Source: Rebecca billardiae RCC1528
Taxonomy: Eukaryota > Protista > Haptophyta
Length of the DNA: 64,000 bases
Assembly (NCBI GenBank): GCA_965240325.2
Contig: OZ251225.1
Span: 1-64,000 of the forward strand
Reading direction: 5' to 3'
Shown here: positions 1 through 10,957 of the stretch, in pieces
How positions within the stretch are numbered: the first letter of the stretch is position 1
Layout: every line of letters starts with the position of its first letter
Made by a program: the position numbers and the translations under genes
Notes under the pieces: model-generated
The model's input: only the letters and a program-made list of their open reading frames with translations
Told to the model about the DNA's origin: nothing
The model's database searches: none

Positions 1-19
1 CCTAACCCTAACCCTAACC

Positions 20-60
<41 letters not shown>

Positions 61-77
61 CCCTAACCCTAAACCTA

Positions 78-110
<33 letters not shown>

Positions 111-382
111 ACCCTAACCCTAAAACCTAAAACCCTAACCCTAACCCTAACCTAACCCTAAAACCTAAAAACCTAAACCCTAACCCTAAACCCTAACCCT
201 AACCCCTAACCCTAACCCTAACCCTAACCCTAACCCTAACCCTAACCCTAACCCTAACCCTAACCCTAACCCTAACCCTAACCCTAACCCTAACCCTTAA
301 CCCTAACCCTAACCTAAACCCTAACCCCTAACCCTAACCCTAACCCTAACCCTAACCCTAACCCTAACCCTAACCCTAACCC

Positions 383-423
<41 letters not shown>

Positions 424-487
424 CCCTAACCCTAACCCTAACCCTAACCCTAACCCCTAACCCTAACCCTAACCCTAACCCCTAACC

Positions 488-559
<72 letters not shown>

Positions 560-561
560 CC

Positions 562-602
<41 letters not shown>

Positions 603-605
603 CCC

Positions 606-659
<54 letters not shown>

Positions 660-860
660 CCCTTAACCTAAACCTAAACCCTAACCTAACCCTAACCCTA
701 ACCCTAACCCTAACCCCTAAACCCTAACCCTAACCCTAACCCTAACCCTAACCTAACCCTAACCCTAACCCTAACCCTAACCCTAACCCTAACCCTAACC
801 CCTAACCCTAACCCTAACCCTAACCCTAACCCTAACCTAACCCTAACCCTAACCCTAAAC

Positions 861-901
<41 letters not shown>

Positions 902-1080
902 CCCTAACCCTAACCCTAACCCTAACCCTAAACCCTAAACCCTAACCCTAACCCTAACCCTAACCCTAACCCTAACCCTAACCCTAACCCTAACCCTAAC
1001 CCTAACCCTAACCCCTAACCCTAACCCTAACCCTAACCCTAACCCTAACCCTAACCCTAACCCTAACCCTAACCCTAACC

Positions 1081-1165
<85 letters not shown>

Positions 1166-1173
1166 CCCTAACC

Positions 1174-1214
<41 letters not shown>

Positions 1215-2098
1215 CCCTAACCCTAACCCTAACCCTAACCCCTAACCCTAACCCTAACCCTAACCCTAACCCCTAACCCTAACCCTAACCCTAACCCTAA
1301 CCCTAACCCTAACCCCTAACCCTAACCCTAACCCTAACCCTAACCCTAACCCTAACCCTAACCCTAACCCTAACCCTAACCCTAACCCTAACCCTAACCC
1401 TAACCCTAACCCTAACCCTAACCCTAACCCTAACCCTAACCCTAACCCTAACCCTAACCCTAACCCTAACCCTAACCCTAACCCTAACCCTAACCCTAAC
1501 CCTAACCCTAACCCTAACCCTAACCCTAACCCTAACCCTAACCCTAACCCTAACCCTAACCCTAACCCTAACCCTAACCCTAACCCTAACCCTAACCCTA
1601 ACCCTAACCCTAACCCTAACCCTAACCCTAACCCTAACCCTAACCCTAACCCTAACCCTAACCCTAACCCTAACCCTAACCCTAACCCTAACCCTAACCC
1701 TAACCCTAACCCTAACCCTAACCCTAACCCTAACCCTAACCCTAACCCTAACCCTAACCCTAACCCTAACCCTAACCCTAACCCTAACCCTAACCCTAAC
1801 CCTAACCCCTAACCCTAACCCTAACCCTAACCCTAACCCTAACCCTAACCCTAACCCTAACCCTAACCCTAACCCTAACCCTAACCCTAACCCTAACCCT
1901 AACCCTAACCCTAACCCTAACCCTAACCCTAACCCTAACCCTAACCCTAACCCTAACCCTAACCCTAACCCTAACCCTAACCCTAACCCTAACCCTAACC
2001 CTAACCCTAACCCTAACCCTAACCCTAACCCTAACCCTAACCCTAACCCCTAACCCTAACCCTAACCCTAACCCTAACCCTAACCCCTAACCCTAACC
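1..2098 (+). repeat. Telomere, (CCCTAA)n = (TTAGGG)n, about 2.1 kb
   Basis: Continuous CCCTAA array from base 1 with the C-rich strand on +, as expected at a left chromosome end. One-base indel variants are concentrated distally. Confidence 0.97.
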
Positions 2099-2716
2099 AG
2101 GCGGGCCGGCGGCATCAGCTACAGAGCAGTGGCTGGCTCTGGCGGCGAGCGCGCGCGGCGCGCGCGGCGGCAGGAGCGCGAGCGCAGCAGCGCTGGCGCG
2201 GATCGACGTGGACGCGGAGCGCGGACGCGGCAGCGCGGACGCGGAGCGACACGGACGCGGCGCGTGCGCGGGCGGTACGGCCCGGCGCAGCGCGGCACGG
2301 TGACGTCGCACGGGCATGGCTCGGCCGCCATCGTGGAAGCGTGTTGGAGTTCTCGAGAACGCAAACACGACCGTTTCATCCAGAAATTCATCACGGACGA
2401 GGACGTCCGGATTCAACGGGTACACGGATCCAGAAACCGTGTGCGACCAGCAGTTACGGCGGTGCGTCGGGAACACCTGTGATTGGTTGACGCACGGGGC
2501 GTGCGGCTCGGAATCATTGAGATTCCCCGAGCCGGGCCAGCAAACGCCGGGTCACCCCGCCGGAGCCGAAAAGAGCTCGGCGGGAGGTTAGCTTTTGCTC
2601 GTCAGAGGAGCGAGGGTCGAGATTGCCTTCGTGGGCGTCACCGACGACGCGCCCGAGGACGTGCCGGTGAGCTCTTAGCAGGGCTCGAGACGCTCGGAGC
2701 TCGCGTTTACCCAATA
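2096..2716 (+). mobile_element. 5'-truncated LTR (3' or solo) related to the copia element at 32989-40359
   Basis: Matches the reverse complement of the 721-bp LTRs from ACCAGGCGGGCCGGCGGCATCAGCTAC to ...GCTCGCGTTTACCCAATA, with a diverged middle. It lacks about the first 75 bp and is followed by host repeat rather than internal sequence. Confidence 0.9.
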
Positions 2717-2945
2717 ATATCTGTACACTCTGTATGTTTTCGCTTATTCCTCTGAATGTATCCGAATGTAGATTGTGACGGTATATTGTACACTTTGTAC
2801 ACTTCTTGATTGTACATATGAATGTACACTATTGTATACATTTTGAATGTACACATTTGTACACTTTGTACACTCTGTACACTGATTGATTGTACATATC
2901 TGAATTTATCCGAATGTACATTGCAACAGTACATCTGATGATCAA

Positions 2946-3365
2946 ATGTATCCGAATGTACAATGTAGTACATTCCAAATGTACAATGTACATTTCCGAA
3001 TGTACAATGTACATTCCAAATGTACAATGTACTACATTCCAAATGTACAATGTACACTTCCGAATGTACAATGTACATTCCAAATGTACAATGTACATTT
3101 CCGAATGTACAATGTACTACATTCCAAATGTACAATGTACACTTCCGAATGTACAATGTACATTCCAAATGTACAATGTACATTTCCGAATGTACAATGT
3201 ACTACATTCCAAATGTACAATGTACACTTCCGAATGTACAATGTACATTCCAAATGTACAATGTACACTTCCGAATGTACAATGTACATTCCGAATGTAC
3301 AATGTACATTCCAAATGTACAATGTACATTCCAAATGTACAATGTACATTCCAAATGTACAATGT
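2946..3365. repeat. AT-rich minisatellite of 20-23-bp units (TTCC(A/G)AATGTACAATGTAC(A/TACA))
   Basis: Tandem units rich in the palindrome TGTACA; degenerate units extend back to 2717. Confidence 0.95.
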
Positions 3366-3375
3366 GAGGGTGAGG

Positions 3376-4000
3376 GTAAGGGTTAGGGCGCAGGTAAGGG
3401 TTAGGGCGCAGGTAAGGGTTAGGGCGCAGGTAAGGGTTAGGGCGCAGGTAAGGGTTAGGGCGCAGGTAAGGGTTAGGGCGCAGGTAAGGGTTAGGGCGCA
3501 GGTAAGGGTTAGGGCGCTGGTAAGGGTTAGGGCGCAGGTAAGGGTTAGGGCGCAGGTAAGGGTTAGGGCGCAGGTAAGGGTTAGGGCGCAGGTAAGGGTT
3601 AGGGCGCAGGTAAGGGTTAGGGCGCAGGTAAGGGTTAGGGCGCAGGTAAGGGTTAGGGCGCAGGTAAGGGTTAGGGCGCTGGTAAGGGTTAGGGCGCAGG
3701 TAAGGGTTAGGGCGCAGGTAAGGGTTAGGGCGCAGGTAAGGGTTAGGGCGCAGGTAAGGGTTAGGGCGCAGGTAAGGGTTAGGGCGCAGGTAAGGGTTAG
3801 GGCGCAGGTAAGGGTTAGGGCGCTGGTAAGGGTTAGGGCGCAGGTAAGGGTTAGGGCGCAGGTAAGGGTTAGGGCGCAGGTAAGGGTTAGGGCGCAGGTA
3901 AGGGTTAGGGCGCAGGTAAGGGTTAGGGCGCAGGTAAGGGTTAGGGCGCAGGTAAGGGTTAGGGCGCAGGTAAGGGTTAGGGTTAGGGTGGTGGTTAGGG
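3376..4000 (+). repeat. 33 x GTAAGGGTTAGGGCGCAG telomere-variant array, inverted relative to the telomere
   Basis: Exact 18-bp period over 3376-3969 with occasional CGCTG variants, ending in GGGTTAGGGTTAGGGTGGTGGTTAGGG. Confidence 0.97.
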
Positions 4001-4021
4001 TCGCCAGTACTAAAATGAGAA

Positions 4022-4134
4022 TTTCTCGAGATTGACCGAACTGATTTCAACGAGACTTGGGCTCTGCCATGGAAATGGGAAGGGCTAAGGGCCCTCCAAT
4101 TTTGAGAGAATTTGGCTCGGTCAATCTCGAGAAA
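4022..4134. repeat. 18-bp perfect inverted repeat in the element's terminal module
   Basis: TTTCTCGAGATTGACCGA (4022-4039) and TCGGTCAATCTCGAGAAA (4117-4134) with a 77-bp spacer. Repeated at 4439-4551 and 7669-7781. Confidence 0.92.
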
Positions 4135-4145
4135 ACATACTTCTA

Positions 4146-4562
4146 GGCGCCGGTAAGGGTTAGGGCGCCGGTAAGGGTTAGGGCGCAGGTAAGGGTTAGG
4201 GCGCCGGTAAGGGTTAGGGCGCAGGTAAGGGTTAGGGCGCAGGTAAGGGTTAGGGCGCAGGTAAGGGTTAGGGCGCAGGTAAGGGTTAGGGCGCAGGTAA
4301 GGGTTAGGGCGCAGGTAAGGGTTAGGGCGCAGGTAAGGGTTAGGGCGCAGGTAAGGGTTAGGGCGCAGGTAAGGGTTAGGGCGCAGGTAAGGGTTAGGGT
4401 TAGGGTGGTGGTTAGGGTCGCCAGTACTAAAATGAGAATTTCTCGAGATTGACCGAACTGATTTCAACGAGACTTGGGCTCTGCCATGGAAATGGGAAGG
4501 GCTAAGGGCCCTCCAATTTTGAGAGAATTTGGCTCGGTCAATCTCGAGAAAACATACTTCTA
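4146..4562. mobile_element. Telomere-associated element, copy B (short)
   Basis: 13 x 18-mer (some CGCCG variants) plus the same terminal module ending CATACTTCTA. Confidence 0.75.
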
Positions 4563-5188
4563 ACGCCGTGCAGCAGCTGGAAGAGCACATCGTCGATGCG
4601 CTTGAGCCAGATCACCGGCGGCGACTCCTGCCCGCCGTGCTGCTCGACGTGGTCCAGCCACCCGCCGTGGTCGTCGTCGCGCATCTTGTGCAGCTTGTCG
4701 CGCGAGTCCTTGGCGGCGGCGGCGTTGGCGAACTTCACCTTGCAGCACGGGCACTCGAAGGGCTCGTTCTCGTGGCCCGGCACCGGCGCGTGCGCGGCGT
4801 TGAAGCAGTACTCCATGGTGCGCCAGCTCGGCTCCGCCGTCGCCGGCTCCTTCCGGCCGTTGGTGCGACGGATGAACGGCTTCCTGCCGTTGTGCTGCGA
4901 CACGCCAAGCACGCCGCGCGCGAACTCGCTGTCGCCGTTCAGCAAGAACTCGAGGTGGACGCAGCAGGAGCACTCCGAGTCGCACGGGTCGCGGTCGGGG
5001 TCCTCCACGCAGAGCTTCTTCACGCGCGTCATCTCGTACAGCACGTTGTACTCCGACCCGAGCGCGCCCGCCAGGTCGTGGTCGGAGCAGTCGAACACCG
5101 CGATCGTGTGGAAGTTCTTGGGCGCGCAGTAGCCGACTGTGAGCCCGGCGTCGCGCACGCAGATGATGGTGATCGCGCCGGCTGCGCA
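4563..5188 (-). pseudogene. Truncated exon of a putative RAG1/Transib-like DDE transposase
   Basis: Strong GC3 codon bias. Preceded by a CTAAC branch point and CAG acceptor (5189-5191). Motifs KNFHTIAVF, EFLLNGDSEFARGVLG, RT..AH..FECPCC and H...HGGQ..PP...LLH resemble the RAG1/Transib-like core (GD[K/x], Zn ligands, DxLH). Cut at 4562 by copy B. Confidence 0.45.
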
Positions 5189-5561
5189 CTGGGCGCGCAG
5201 TGGTGAGGTTAGGCCCAAAGAGACATCTACCCTGGGTGAGGTTACCAGCCGCGGCCGTTTCGGCCCAGTGGGGGCCGGCTGGGGCGGCGTGTTTGGCGGC
5301 CCAGGAGGCTCTGGGCCGGCCGAGTGGGCCGAGCTGGGCTGCCCAGAGCCTCCCAGGCCGGCTCCAGCTGGGCTGGGAGGGCTGGCGCCAGGCTGCGCGC
5401 CGGCTGCGCACTGGGCGCGCAGTGGTGAGGTTAGGCCCAAAGAGACATCTACCCTGAGTGAGGTTACCAGCCGCGGCCGTTTCGACCCGGTGGCGGCCGG
5501 CTGGGGCGGCGTGTCTGGCGGCCCAGGAGGCTCTGGGCCGGCCGACTCTGCCGAGCTGGGC
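5174..5561. repeat. 222-bp tandem duplication (about 1.75 copies)
   Basis: CGCGCCGGCTGCGCACTGGGCGCGCAGTGGTGAGGTTAGGCCCAAAGAGACATCTACCCTG starts at 5174 and again at 5396. Confidence 0.9.
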
Positions 5562-6221
5562 AAATCATTCTGAGATGGGCGGTCAAGGATCCGCTTGCGC
5601 ACGTTGACAAGGCTGGAGAGCAATCGTCCCCTCTGCTTGCTTGAGCTGTGGCATGCAATGGGTGCTGCTCTGTGCGCGCCCCCTGTGCAGGTTGAGCCAA
5701 GAGCAAGATGGGGGGGCGGGGCGGGGGCAGCTTTGACAGGTGCTCAGCGCTTGAGCTGAGCTTTGACAGGTGCTGCACTCGTCCGCACCGCAGCATACTA
5801 TTCTGCCACAGCCACTCTGCTTAGCAGCCATGCGCTTGATTTGCCCTATCAACTGTCGTTGTCATCATCGAGGTCTCGTCATCGATGATTGACAGCTCAC
5901 AGCTGCAACTCGAGATCGACTGACTGGTGCTGATGCCAACCACATTATTGAGGGATACTCCCCGCACAGAACTAGGACGTATGTACGAGCAGCTGCTCTC
6001 ACCAGTTGCTGCTCACCAGAGTCAAGTAGGACTAGGCTTCAGATGGGGGGGCGGGGCGGGGCCTGCATCGACCGGTGCTGTGCTCTGAGACTGCAGGCGC
6101 GAAAGTACGTTTTTGACTGTACATATCTGTACACTCTGTATGTTTTCGCTTATTCCTCTGAATGTATCCGAATGTAGATTGTGACGGTATATTGTACACT
6201 TTGTACACTTCTTGATTGTAC

Positions 6222-6724: not shown

Positions 6725-7789
6725 TGTACATATGAATGTACACTATTGTATACATTTTGAATGTACACATTTGTACACTTTGTACACTCTGTACACTGAT
6801 TGATTGTACATATCTGAATTTATCCGAATGTACATTGCAACAGTACATCTGATGATCAAATGTATCCGAATGTACAATGTAGTACATTCCAAATGTACAA
6901 TGTACATTTCCGAATGTACAATGTACATTCCAAATGTACAATGTACTACATTCCAAATGTACAATGTACACTTCCGAATGTACAATGTACATTCCAAATG
7001 TACAATGTACATTTCCGAATGTACAATGTACTACATTCCAAATGTACAATGTACACTTCCGAATGTACAATGTACATTCCAAATGTACAATGTACACTTC
7101 CGAATGTACAATGTACATTCCAAATGTACAATGTACATTCCAAATGTACAATGTACATTCCAAATGTACAATGTGAGGGTGAGGGTAAGGGTTAGGGCGC
7201 AGGTAAGGGTTAGGGCGCAGGTAAGGGTTAGGGCGCAGGTAAGGGTTAGGGCGCAGGTAAGGGTTAGGGCGCAGGTAAGGGTTAGGGCGCAGGTAAGGGT
7301 TAGGGCGCTGGTAAGGGTTAGGGCGCAGGTAAGGGTTAGGGCGCAGGTAAGGGTTAGGGCGCAGGTAAGGGTTAGGGCGCAGGTAAGGGTTAGGGCGCAG
7401 GTAAGGGTTAGGGCGCAGGTAAGGGTTAGGGCGCAGGTAAGGGTTAGGGCGCTGGTAAGGGTTAGGGCGCTGGTAAGGGTTAGGGCGCAGGTAAGGGTTA
7501 GGGCGCAGGTAAGGGTTAGGGCGCAGGTAAGGGTTAGGGCGCAGGTAAGGGTTAGGGCGCAGGTAAGGGTTAGGGCGCAGGTAAGGGTTAGGGCGCAGGT
7601 AAGGGTTAGGGCGCAGGTAAGGGTTAGGGTTAGGGTGGTGGTTAGGGTCGCCAGTACTAAAATGAGAATTTCTCGAGATTGACCGAACTGATTTCAACGA
7701 GACTTGGGCTCTGCCATGGAAATGGGAAGGGCTAAGGGCCCTCCAATTTTGAGAGAATTTGGCTCGGTCAATCTCGAGAAAACATACTT

Positions 7790-7816
7790 CTAACCCCTAA
7801 CCCTAACCCTAACCTA
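7790..7816 (+). repeat. Interstitial telomeric tract (former chromosome end)
   Basis: CTAACCCCTAACCCTAACCCTAACCTA in the same orientation as the terminal telomere, between the element end and the satellite. Confidence 0.85.
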
Positions 7817-9040: not shown

Positions 9041-10957
9041 TCTGCTTTGCTGCAGCGGAAGAAGAAGAGTCCGAGGCGCTCACTGAATACACTGTGCTGA
9101 CTCGCCAAGCCCTGACAGCGTTGCTATGATGCAGCCGCAGCCCTCTGGCTCAGCACAGTCCATCACAAGCGATGGCGCAGTGGCAGACCTCGTCAGCCTC
9201 TCCACCGGCGCCTGGCAAGCCTCGTCTCTACTATTCGCCGCCGCGCCGGCCCCGGCAGAACACGTGACCGCGCCGGCGGCCGTCAGCTGGTGCCATCACC
9301 GATGGCGCGTGCGGCGATGATTCCGATCCCACGCCTGCGCGCTGCGCTACACGTGGCGGCGCACCCGGGCGCAGAGGCGGGCTTGAGGACCGGTCGGCAT
9401 CGCGCGCGGGTGCGGGCAGCGCGCGTGCGCTTCGGCCCGCCCTCTCCGTGCACGCTCGCCGCCCCCGGCGGGGGTGCAGCCGGGCGGCGGGTGATGGCTC
9501 GCCGGGCCCGCCGATTGCCGCCAGGCTCGCGTGCTGCCGGTCGTGTGCGCGGCGCGAGTCGGCTGGAAGCCTGCATCATGCGGGCTCTCGCGAGTCAGAC
9601 GAGCAACGCGTATATGCCACCACTCCGTGCGCACCCGGCCACGCGCCCTCGGCCTCCACCGCATCCGCCGCGTGCCCTGCTGCGCGTGCTTGGCATGCGC
9701 TGCGGGGGCTAAACCACCAGTCGGTCGGCGTTGGCCATCCAGCTCGCGCGCGCTCGGCGCGCCGCACGCGATTGCCGCTCACTATTCGCGCACCAGGTGC
9801 AGTTTGGACGAAGAGCAAGATGGGGGGGGGGGGCGGGGCAGCTTTGACCAGGGCAAGGCGCTGGGCCGGCGGTGGAGCGCCCGCAGCTTCCTGGTGTGCG
9901 CTTTGCATCGAGCCACTGTGGGCAGCGAGCGCGCCGGCCGGCCGCGCGCGTGGAGCGCTCCGCTCGAGCGCGGCGCGGTCGCGGCAGCCTCGGTGCAGCA
10001 GGAGCGCGCGCGACTGAACGCGGGCTCACAAGTCCCGCCAAAGCGCGCCAGAGCAGTCGTGCCATCGGCAGCCGTGATCACCGCGCACGCGAGGCAGGTC
10101 GGACGAGACGCGAGATGGGGGCGCGGGGTGGGGGCAGCTTCGACCAGTGCGAGGCGCCGGGGCGGCTGGGCGCCCTCCGCGCGTCGCCCCCGGCGCACAG
10201 CCGCGCCGCCCTCCGACGACGCCGAGGCGAGCTCGCACCGACTTCTGCCAGCCAGCCGCGACCCCGAGTGGCGAGCCGTCACGCACGGCAACGCACGCGC
10301 GGTGCACCGGCACGGCGGAGGGGAGGTGCGCTCGCGCGGACGAGAGGGCAACGTGTGCGCGCGCAAGCGCCCCGCGTGGGGCCGCGCTTGCGCAGGCTGC
10401 TCATCGGCGCGCGTCACGCCTGCCAGCCGCTGCAGCCCCGGATCGCCTGACGCCCGTCGGCCGCGAGTCACGTCACGCGGTGCCGGCAGCTGCTCCTGCG
10501 CCGGGGGAGCGAGCACGCTCGTGCGCGTGGGGGGAAGAGCAGCGAATACACGAGCTGCCCGTGCCGTGCGCGAGGTGCCGCCGACCCGCCCTCGCGCCCG
10601 CCGTGCGCGCCGCGCGGCGCCACCCTGCGGCGAGCTCGGCTTGGTTCCCGCCCAGGCGGCCAGGCCGGTTCAGGAGATACCAGATGATAGTCATCGAAAG
10701 AAGGGCTGGTGGCGTATTTGATCTATGCTGGCGACTCTGAATCATATGCTCGTCGGCGCCGTGTTGATGAGTATTGATTGAGGTGAGTCGGCGAATCGAA
10801 TTGCGAGCGTGTTGCGCGAATCGGCACAAACGCGTTTCATTCGCCCAACATTCACCGTGATGATATGCGAAAGGATGACGAGTTTCCCCACCATGTATTG
10901 TTCGGCATCACATCACACCCGCGCACTCTCAACTCGCGATTCTCATCGACCTCGGCG

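What the first reader, a model, noticed from the sequence alone, without database searches (positions are those of the whole stretch)
4563..5188. RAG1/Transib-like transposase exon inside the telomeric element
Seen: a coding-biased exon with a proper branch point and acceptor, reading away from the element's fixed end. It contains N..TIAV...L...L..., FLLNGD...LG, a CPCC/H...H metal-binding insert and GQ..PP...LLH. Known: RAG1/Transib cores have a GD[E/K]-type second catalytic Asp, CxxC/HxxH zinc ligands and DxLH, and Transib TIRs start CAC. Inference: a divergent RAG-like transposase whose element end reads TAGAAG instead, possibly the enzyme that drives the telomeric stack.
Basis: partly seen in the sequence, partly recalled or inferred. 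Interest (0 to 1): 0.7.

Follow-up and report, generated by a model that had tools for sequence, protein, structure and literature searches.

The report
Captured fragment of RAG1-fold transposase gene
The stretch is a dead 613-base piece copied from the middle of a transposon gene on another chromosome and trapped between chromosome-end repeats; the gene it came from does encode a RAG1-like enzyme, but this piece is not an exon and cannot be the enzyme that builds the chromosome-end repeats.

Summary
Window 4563-5175 is an ungapped copy, 608/613 bases identical, of an internal part of a long uninterrupted ORF at G000:C14:817382-817994. It is the only other DNA copy in the 72-Mb genome. Both ends of the homology fall inside that ORF, so they are duplication breakpoints, not splice sites. 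The "branch point and acceptor" lie in a 222-bp subtelomeric repeat that recurs elsewhere with no coding sequence behind it.

The parent protein family is a remote RAG1/Transib relative:
- a 52-sequence profile hits only RAG1/RAG1L among PDB sequences (E 3e-5), aligning RAG1 D708 and E962;
- an AlphaFold model (pLDDT 76.8) matches RAG1 at Z 16, against 7.7 for the next fold.

Its multicopy paralogue has CACAGCAACGA... inverted ends and 2-3 bp target duplications. That fits the CACTA-Mirage-Chapaev-Transib (CMCT) group, not canonical Transib (5 bp).

The fragment covers residues 171-374. It lacks the first catalytic Asp and the Glu, so it cannot be active. A paralogous element on C13 is inserted into the subtelomeric module with a 2-bp duplication, which shows these transposons use the telomeric repeats as a target. 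Nothing found here suggests they build them.

The scan had already reported this transposon family elsewhere in this genome. The finding is ordinary, in an interesting setting.

The parts
4563..5175 (-). Captured internal fragment (residues about 171-374) of a RAG1-fold (CMCT-clade) transposase ORF. It contains the second catalytic Asp (D251), CPCC (C311-C314), H349 and H372. It lacks D161 and E700.
   Evidence: 608/613 identical, ungapped, to C14:817382-817994. There are 5 differences, 3 non-synonymous and 2 synonymous.
4417..4562 (+). Second copy of the 146-bp subtelomeric module. Its fixed end ...ACATACTTCTA abuts the fragment directly.
   Evidence: The same end abuts an 18-mer array at 4146, a buried telomere tract at 7793, and a different sequence in a short-read contig.
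5176..5561 (.). About 1.7 copies of a 222-bp subtelomeric unit. The right breakpoint has a 2-bp CG overlap. This unit holds the supposed branch point and acceptor.
   Evidence: Window 5174-6221 is 100% identical to the C13 right end (L007 8247-7200), where these units abut the telomere.
4538..5623 (-). Mechanical 361-aa ORF: the fragment's frame read on into the 222-bp repeats, with a TTG 'start' and a stop inside the module.
   Evidence: No Pfam match.
4434..4435 (.). Empty target site (GA on the plus strand, TC on the minus strand) of the paralogous B transposon that is inserted in the C13 copy of the module. Equivalent sites lie at 4017-4018 and 7664-7665.
   Evidence: Filled versus empty site comparison.
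1..2098 (+). Terminal (CCCTAA)n telomere of contig C7.
7647..7814 (+). Third module copy (7647-7792) followed by a 22-nt buried telomere tract (7793-7814).

Best explanation
Window 4563-5175 is a non-functional, recently copied 613-bp piece from the middle of the transposase ORF of a cut-and-paste DNA transposon. The only full-length relative of that sequence lies at C14:~816-820 kb. The piece became fixed at a junction between two blocks of subtelomeric repeats on contig C7. Distal to it is the 146-bp module. Proximal to it is the 222-bp unit array, which at another chromosome end carries the telomere. Shown: the copy relationship, the breakpoints inside the ORF, the uniqueness of the fragment, and the absence of two of the three catalytic residues. 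Inferred: the route. Most likely transposon DNA was joined in during repair or healing of a broken chromosome end, either as filler or as the eroded remnant of a subtelomeric insertion, before a further module copy was added on top. The parent enzyme is a DDE transposase with the RAG1/Transib fold. It has an RNase-H core with D161, D251 and E700, and a conserved C311-x2-C314/H349/H372 probable zinc site between D2 and E. Its active paralogues have CACAG... inverted ends, make 2-3 bp target duplications and prefer AT-rich DNA, which includes the subtelomeres. I infer it moves by the hairpin-forming cut-and-paste chemistry of that group. It is a parasite of the subtelomere, not its builder.
For: Copy relationship and breakpoints. 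Five substitutions, 3 non-synonymous; for the two checked by eye (P to Q, G to C) the C14 residue matches paralogue B in the four-paralogue alignment. The fragment lacks D161 and E700. RAG1 homology: language-model look-alikes; the 52-sequence profile hits only RAG1/RAG1L in PDB sequences, E 3e-5, aligning D708 and E962; AlphaFold model pLDDT 76.8, pTM 0.73; Foldseek top 49 hits are all RAG1, BbRAGL or HzTransib; VIA-align Z 16.0 over 440 residues (RAG1 479-1007) against 7.7 for the P element. Mobility of the family: about 47 copies with ends CACAGCAACGATTTC / CACAGCAACGACTTC, including 6.25-kb autonomous copies 99-99.96% alike. Target duplication: in 19 of 19 flank pairs compared by eye, 2 or 3 bp were shared. 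B element with a 2-bp TSD and an empty site in the window's own modules. Subtelomere layout. A short-read contig spans 5054-5204 with no differences, carrying the window-specific variants.
Against: The route of capture is not observed. Microhomology at the junctions is 0-2 bp, which does not discriminate between routes. The left junction (4562/4563) is not bridged by any short-read contig, and the right one is bridged by only 29 nt, from what may be the same sample. No RNA data exist, so expression of the fragment cannot be excluded. Placement inside the CMCT group rests on fold, termini and TSD. No curated Pfam family reaches threshold.
Confidence: 0.88

Rival explanations
1. One reading: an exon of a working RAG-like transposase gene that belongs to the telomeric element and drives its stacking.
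For: The motifs are real and RAG1-like. The fragment abuts the element's fixed end. Relatives of the gene recur near chromosome ends: B on C13, C at C20:11 kb, and D copies at C13:5.9 kb and C27:15 kb.
Against: The fragment is unique to this subtelomere. Both edges are breakpoints inside a continuous ORF. D161 and E700 are absent. The family has its own CACAG ends and TSDs. B is inserted into a module with a TSD. The parent on C14 is unlinked to any module or 18-mer.
Confidence: 0.02
2. Route variant A: a full-length A-type transposon had inserted in the C7 subtelomere, as B did on C13. Terminal erosion and an internal deletion then removed all but 613 bp, and the broken end was healed by addition of a module copy.
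For: Family members demonstrably land in subtelomeric modules and in AT-rich DNA. Elsewhere the module's fixed end is joined to telomere repeats and to other sequences, as expected if it is added onto chromosome ends.
Against: This needs two separate deletions, both ending inside the ORF. No inverted-end remnant or target duplication is left. Only one full A-type copy exists today.
Confidence: 0.35
3. Route variant B: a free or copied piece of transposon DNA was captured in one step as filler at an end-joining or template-switch junction between two subtelomeric blocks.
For: A single compact insert lies exactly between two unrelated repeat blocks, with 0-2 bp junction overlap. It is 99.2% identical to the donor. 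Excising cut-and-paste elements supply free DNA; this last point is inference.
Against: No direct evidence. A 613-bp filler is long for classical end joining.
Confidence: 0.45
4. Assembly artefact: a chimeric join placed C14 sequence in the C7 subtelomere.
For: Subtelomeres are repeat-rich and prone to misassembly. The left junction is not bridged by short-read contigs.
Against: The window copy differs from C14 at 5 sites. A 151-nt short-read contig carries the three variants it covers (5089, 5117, 5138) and crosses the right junction with no differences.
Confidence: 0.04

Closest known systems
CMCT clade of DNA transposons (EnSpm/CACTA, Mirage, Chapaev, Transib, plus ESTA, Plavaka and Lanisha; Kojima 2025, PMC12730594)
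   Same: DDE transposase with Cys/His zinc ligands between the second Asp and the Glu. Termini are 5'-CA...TG-3' (CACAG...CTGTG). TSDs fall within the 2-5 bp range. The fold is equally close to predicted CACTA (Transposase_21), DUF1280 and RAG1 clusters.
   Different: No curated family model reaches threshold. The usual CxxC right after GD...G is replaced: the conserved CPxC lies about 60 residues after D2, and the His ligands (H349, H372) lie about 330 residues before the Glu rather than just before it. There is a long acidic insert, and an N-terminal coiled coil in the A, B and C paralogues (the N-terminus of D was not recovered). The host is an alga, probably a haptophyte, since the named homologues are from Pavlovales.
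RAG1 / RAG1L / Transib transposase (e.g. PDB 4WWX, 6B40, 6PQX)
   Same: Best sequence and structure match: profile E 3e-5 with D708 and E962 aligned, and Z 16.0, 13.4 and 12.6 over about 440 residues covering pre-RNase H, RNase H, the zinc-binding region and the C-terminal domain. The B element's 3' end reads CACAGTG, identical to the RSS heptamer, followed by ACAAAAAC.
   Different: The TSD is 2-3 bp, not 5. No RAG2-like partner was looked for or seen. PF12940 stays below threshold. HzTransib is not hit by sequence.
Mirage (2-bp TSD), EnSpm/CACTA (3-bp TSD) and Chapaev (3-4 bp); these lengths are from my own knowledge, not from a tool result or a passage I read
   Same: Short TSDs and CAC termini. 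Two distant homologues give weak sub-threshold hits to DUF1280.
   Different: No Transposase_21 hit by sequence. The ends are CACAG(C/T)A..., not CACTA.
Transposon or gene fragments captured at subtelomeric rearrangement junctions (filler DNA, degenerate TE relics)
   Same: A single truncated internal piece, unique to one chromosome end, flanked by unrelated repeat blocks.
   Different: Nothing unusual. The donor is still identifiable at 99.2% identity.

Membership tests
Exon of an expressed gene | The boundaries coincide with introns of the gene. | tested here: not met
   The parent ORF on C14 is continuous across both boundaries. The boundaries are the ends of the DNA homology.
Exon of an expressed gene | Spliced transcripts exist. 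| not testable with these tools
   No RNA run holds the stretch. Only contigs of one DNA-like sample could be laid on it.
RAG1/Transib-fold transposase (parent protein) | RNase-H-fold DDE core whose overall architecture matches RAG1 or Transib. | tested here: met
   Foldseek E 1.5e-6 with the top 49 hits all RAG1, RAGL or Transib. Z 16.0 with 440 residues aligned, and the next fold at 7.7. The model has pLDDT 76.8.
RAG1/Transib-fold transposase (parent protein) | Sequence-level homology that includes the catalytic residues. | tested here: met
   The profile of alignment A4 against PDB sequences hits only RAG1/RAG1L at E<=0.004. D251 aligns to D708 and E700 to E962. Conservation: D161 33/36, D251 36/40, E700 17/20.
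RAG1/Transib-fold transposase (the window fragment itself) | A complete catalytic triad. | tested here: not met
   The fragment covers residues about 171-374, so only D251 is present.
Transib superfamily in the strict sense | 5-bp target site duplication. | tested here: not met
   The 5-bp prediction failed for three copies. All 19 pairs compared share 2 or 3 bp. The B element has a 2-bp TSD with an empty site.
Transib superfamily in the strict sense | Inverted ends that begin CAC, with an RSS-heptamer-like sequence. | tested here: met
   D: CACAGCA. B: CACAGTA and CACAGTG.
Transib superfamily in the strict sense | Match to the curated RAG1 family model (PF12940). | tested here: not met
   No hit for A or B at E<=1. 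One distant homologue scores 18.1 bits against a cut-off of 25. The genome scan with PF12940 was uninformative.
CMCT clade (PMC12730594) | 5'-CA..TG-3' termini and 2-5 bp TSDs. | tested here: met
   The definition was read.
CMCT clade (PMC12730594) | [quoted passage not shown] | tested here: inconclusive
   C311-x2-C314 is conserved (43/45 and 44/45). The His residues are H349 and H372, with H375 in only 20/42, so the spacing differs from H(3-4)H.
EnSpm/CACTA | Match to Transposase_21 (PF02992). | tested here: not met
   No hit in A, B or 46 homologues. There is only a structural resemblance, TM about 0.5.
Component of the telomeric element | Present in other copies of the element, or always linked to the 18-mer and module. 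| tested here: not met
   Only two DNA copies exist in the genome. C14:808-823 kb holds no 18-mer or module. Most D copies lie inside contigs.

The most novel reading that the evidence does not exclude
The trapped transposase fragment is not inert. It may be transcribed as part of a subtelomeric repeat transcript and so feed a small-RNA or heterochromatin pathway that silences the RAG1-fold transposon family, much as P-element insertions in Drosophila subtelomeric TAS repeats do. More broadly, this alga's chromosome ends may act as traps that record and repress these elements.
Probability: 0.05. Interest if true: 0.6.

Novelty: new member of a known kind. Interest (0 to 1): 0.3.

Why it matters
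The fragment itself is an ordinary transposon relic. It matters mainly as a correction: it removes the proposed link between a RAG-like enzyme and the building of the telomeric repeat stack.

The context is of moderate interest. A very GC-rich alga carries a young, mobile family of transposons whose enzyme is a remote RAG1/Transib homologue. That family combines RSS-like CACAG(TG) ends with the short 2-3 bp target duplications of CACTA/Mirage-type elements. One member gives a clean filled-site versus empty-site pair inside a subtelomeric module. This adds an algal branch to the CACTA-Mirage-Chapaev-Transib group, and it shows that chromosome ends here are landing pads for these elements. The scan had already reported the same family from other parts of this genome.

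Tried and rejected
- Pfam scan and PDB sequence search with the fragment alone found nothing.
- Pfam on the full A and B proteins gave only low-complexity noise.
- The word-based protein search with A residues 1-460 found nothing.
- The four-paralogue profile against PDB sequences found nothing real, and its AlphaFold model was poor (pLDDT 48.7). Both worked only after 48 distant homologues were added from the full HMM search.
- The genome scan with PF12940 found no candidates and the controls were silent, so it is uninformative.
- The 5-bp TSD hypothesis failed.
The 5' flanks of the D copies were therefore read from anchored pattern matches only. Full D and A elements were not assembled. The exact A-element termini remain undefined.
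- Reads: only contigs of one sample were available. There is no RNA evidence, and the left junction is not bridged.
- I considered whether the module end is a Helitron-type CTRR terminus and dropped the idea, because the flanking bases do not fit.
- An mRNA retrocopy primed on the chromosome end does not fit the strand orientation. This is inference only.

Full report
**What is at the coordinates**

The window is the left end of contig C7 of a 72-Mb, 41-contig assembly. Bases 1-2098 are (CCCTAA)n telomere.

The minus strand of 4538-5623 is open for 361 codons. So the letters are there.

A protein search and a DNA search of the whole genome found only one other copy of this sequence. Window 4563-5175 matches C14:817382-817994 on the same strand, ungapped, at 608 of 613 bases. 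Homology stops abruptly at both ends.

**It is a fragment, not an exon**

On C14 the matching segment lies in the middle of a 795-codon ORF (L006:3116-5503, minus strand). That ORF runs on without interruption on both sides of the two end points. The parent gene therefore has no intron at either place, and the "exon boundaries" are duplication breakpoints.

The proposed branch point (cctaac) and acceptor (cccag, ending at 5189) lie beyond the right breakpoint, in a 222-bp subtelomeric unit. The same unit recurs at window 5398 and three times at the right end of contig C13, where no coding sequence follows it. The cctaac is simply the telomere-like motif of that unit.

The 361-aa ORF is the fragment's frame read on into those repeats.

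The five differences from C14 are three non-synonymous (P to Q, G to C, N to K) and two synonymous. For the two I checked by eye (P to Q, G to C), the C14 residue is the one seen in paralogue B in the four-paralogue alignment. The window copy therefore looks like the decaying one.

**What the parent gene is**

Pfam and PDB sequence searches with single sequences found nothing, and neither did the word-based protein search.

The genome holds four paralogous lineages:
- A: the parent on C14. It has a one-base frameshift between an N-terminal coiled-coil part and the catalytic part.
- B: a 1617-codon ORF at the right end of C13.
- C: at C20, about 11 kb from the contig start.
- D: about ten near-identical copies with open frames of 1206-1589 codons, most of them 1583-1589.

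A language-model look-alike search pointed to RAG1 clusters (0.94).

A full HMM search of 1.84 billion representative proteins with the four-paralogue profile gave only 48 hits. The named ones are hypothetical proteins of Pavlovales sp. CCMP2436 and marine protist transcriptomes.

A 52-sequence alignment (A4) gave three lines of evidence:
- **Sequence.** Searched as a profile against all PDB sequences, it hits RAG1 and amphioxus RAG1L and nothing else down to E 0.004. The best E is 3e-5. The family's "tGD...G" aligns to RAG1 "GYDEK...G" (D708), and "vnqgqEhkn" aligns to "ASEGNESGNK" (E962).
- **Model quality.** The alignment lifted the AlphaFold model of A residues 61-795 from pLDDT 48.7 to 76.8, with pTM 0.73.
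- **Fold.** Foldseek's top 49 PDB hits are all RAG1, BbRAGL or HzTransib (best E 1.5e-6). VIA-align gives Z 16.0 over 440 residues of RAG1 479-1007, 13.4 for BbRAGL and 12.6 for HzTransib. The P element transposase scores 7.7 and Hermes 7.1.

Conserved positions fit a DDE enzyme with a zinc site between the second Asp and the Glu:

| Residue | Conserved in |
|---|---|
| D161 | 33/36 |
| D251 | 36/40 |
| C311 | 43/45 |
| C314 | 44/45 |
| H349 | 40/42 |
| H372 | 39/43 |
| E700 | 17/20 |

**Which kind of RAG1-like element**

Shape search of the ESM Atlas puts the model equally near RAG1 clusters, Transposase_21 (CACTA) clusters, DUF1280 clusters and unnamed ones (TM about 0.5). Two distant homologues give sub-threshold Pfam hits to RAG1 and to DUF1280.

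The D lineage allowed the element itself to be defined:
- All copies end at the same base.
- The ends are CACAGCAACGATTTC (5') and CACAGCAACGACTTC (3'), each present 47 times.
- The end pairs are either about 6255 bp apart (autonomous copies, 99-99.96% alike) or about 3535-3550 bp apart (deleted derivatives).
- A 5-bp target duplication, the Transib hallmark, was predicted for three copies and was not found.
- I compared the 5' flanks with the 3' flanks by eye. All 19 pairs share either 2 bp (13 pairs) or 3 bp (6 pairs).
- The flanks are AT-rich, often (TA)n.

The B element gives a cleaner case. It occupies L007:320-6281 (5962 bp). Its ends are CACAGTAAAG... and, on the other strand, CACAGTGAACAAAAAC.... 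It interrupts a subtelomeric module, leaving ...attcTC|element|TCatttta. The window's three intact modules read ...attcTCatttta at the same place. That is a filled site and an empty site with a 2-bp duplication.

CA...TG termini, 2-5 bp duplications and Cys/His motifs between D2 and E are the features of the CACTA-Mirage-Chapaev-Transib ("CMCT") clade as defined in PMC12730594. Kapitonov and Koonin likewise put Chapaev inside a broad Transib superfamily (PMC4411706).

I therefore file the family as a new algal branch of that known group. It is RAG1-like in fold and catalytic motifs, but it is not a canonical Transib.

**Why the fragment cannot be the enzyme of the telomeric stack**

- The fragment covers residues about 171-374 only. 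It carries D251, CPCC, H349 and H372. It misses D161, about 10 residues beyond the right breakpoint, and E700, about 325 residues beyond the left one.
- It occurs in no other subtelomere.
- The full-length parent on C14 has no 18-mer or module within the 15 kb fetched. It is bracketed instead by inverted arms of a ~230-bp repeat that has over a thousand first-look matches in the genome. This suggests, but does not prove, that A is the autonomous partner of a MITE-like family.
- The family's own ends are CACAG..., not TAGAAG.
- On C13 a family member is plainly an insertion into the module.

**How the fragment probably got there (inferred)**

At the C13 end the order from the tip inward is: telomere, 222-bp units, about 1 kb of unique sequence, a minisatellite, an 18-mer array, then the module.

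In the window the same order starts at 5176 and runs to the module at 7647-7792. That module abuts a 22-nt buried telomere tract.

Distal to 5176 lies the fragment. Beyond it, towards the tip, are a truncated block (18-mer array plus module, 4146-4562), a fuller one (2717-4145), about 600 bp of other sequence, and the live telomere.

The module's fixed end ...CTTCTA is joined to four different partners:
- an 18-mer array (4146);
- the fragment (4563);
- telomere repeats (7793);
- another sequence in a short-read contig.

This suggests that module-bearing blocks are added onto chromosome ends. The fragment then marks a former broken end or repair junction. Either an A-type element had landed there and was eroded, or a piece of transposon DNA was captured as filler. 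Junction overlaps of 0-2 bp do not decide between these.

A 151-nt short-read contig with no differences covers 5054-5204. It carries the three window-specific variants it covers (5089, 5117, 5138) and crosses the right junction by 29 nt. This argues against an assembly chimera. The left junction is not bridged.

**Relation to earlier scan notes**

Two earlier follow-ups on other DNA of this genome (s1-341043, s1-363202) described the 6.2-kb CACAG element with a RAG1-fold transposase and reached the same classification. I reached it independently before reading them. Note s1-363207 describes the stacked telomeric element. I saw the three module copies and the buried telomere but did not study that element further.

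**Verdict**

- The thing itself is an ordinary transposon relic. Its family is a new member of a known group.

Noticed in passing
L007:320-6281 (G000:C13:2816986-2822947): An apparently intact 5962-bp paralogous element (1617-codon ORF) is inserted in a subtelomeric module with a 2-bp TSD (TC). Its 3' end reads CACAGTG followed one base later by ACAAAAAC. That is the consensus RSS heptamer plus an 8-of-9 nonamer-like run, but with a 1-nt spacer instead of 12 or 23.
   Followed up: partly
window 4000-4145, 4417-4562, 7647-7792; L007:~180-330: The 146-bp module always ends ...ACATACTTCTA, and this end is joined to different partners: an 18-mer array, the transposase fragment, a 22-nt buried CCCTAA tract at 7793-7814, a short GGTTTAGGGT tract on C13, and another sequence in a short-read contig. 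This looks like the fixed end of something added onto chromosome ends, as with terminal retroelements.
   Followed up: partly
L006:~560-800 and ~9215-9470 (G000:C14:813560-822470): The parent gene copy is bracketed by inverted ~230-bp arms (97% alike over the outer 39 nt). The same arm has 1141 first-look matches at 94-97% identity across the genome, sometimes as adjacent inverted pairs (C15:1518409-1518782). This may be a very abundant MITE family whose autonomous partner is this frameshifted element.
   Followed up: partly
G000: flanks of the ~47 D-family copies: Insertions sit in AT-rich DNA, often (TA)n microsatellites, in a genome that is 70-80% GC. Several copies lie within 6-60 kb of contig starts (C13:5858, C27:15168, C36:20471, C29:59578). 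This suggests that targeting of AT-rich DNA enriches them at subtelomeres.
   Followed up: no
L006:~5560 (G000:C14:~818560): There is a one-base frameshift between the coiled-coil N-terminal part and the catalytic part of the only full-length A-type copy. The donor gene of the fragment may therefore itself be a pseudogene, or the assembly may have a base error there.
   Followed up: partly
L071 (G000:C16:2347204-2350218): A D-family copy has a module end about 160 bp from its 3' end, and its flank reads TAGGGAAATGGTTAGGGTCG. This is another RAG1-fold element sitting in subtelomere-type repeats.
   Followed up: no
window 2099-2716: About 600 bp of GC-rich non-repeat sequence lies between the live telomere and the first repeat block. 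It has no counterpart at the C13 end, and its origin was not examined.
   Followed up: no
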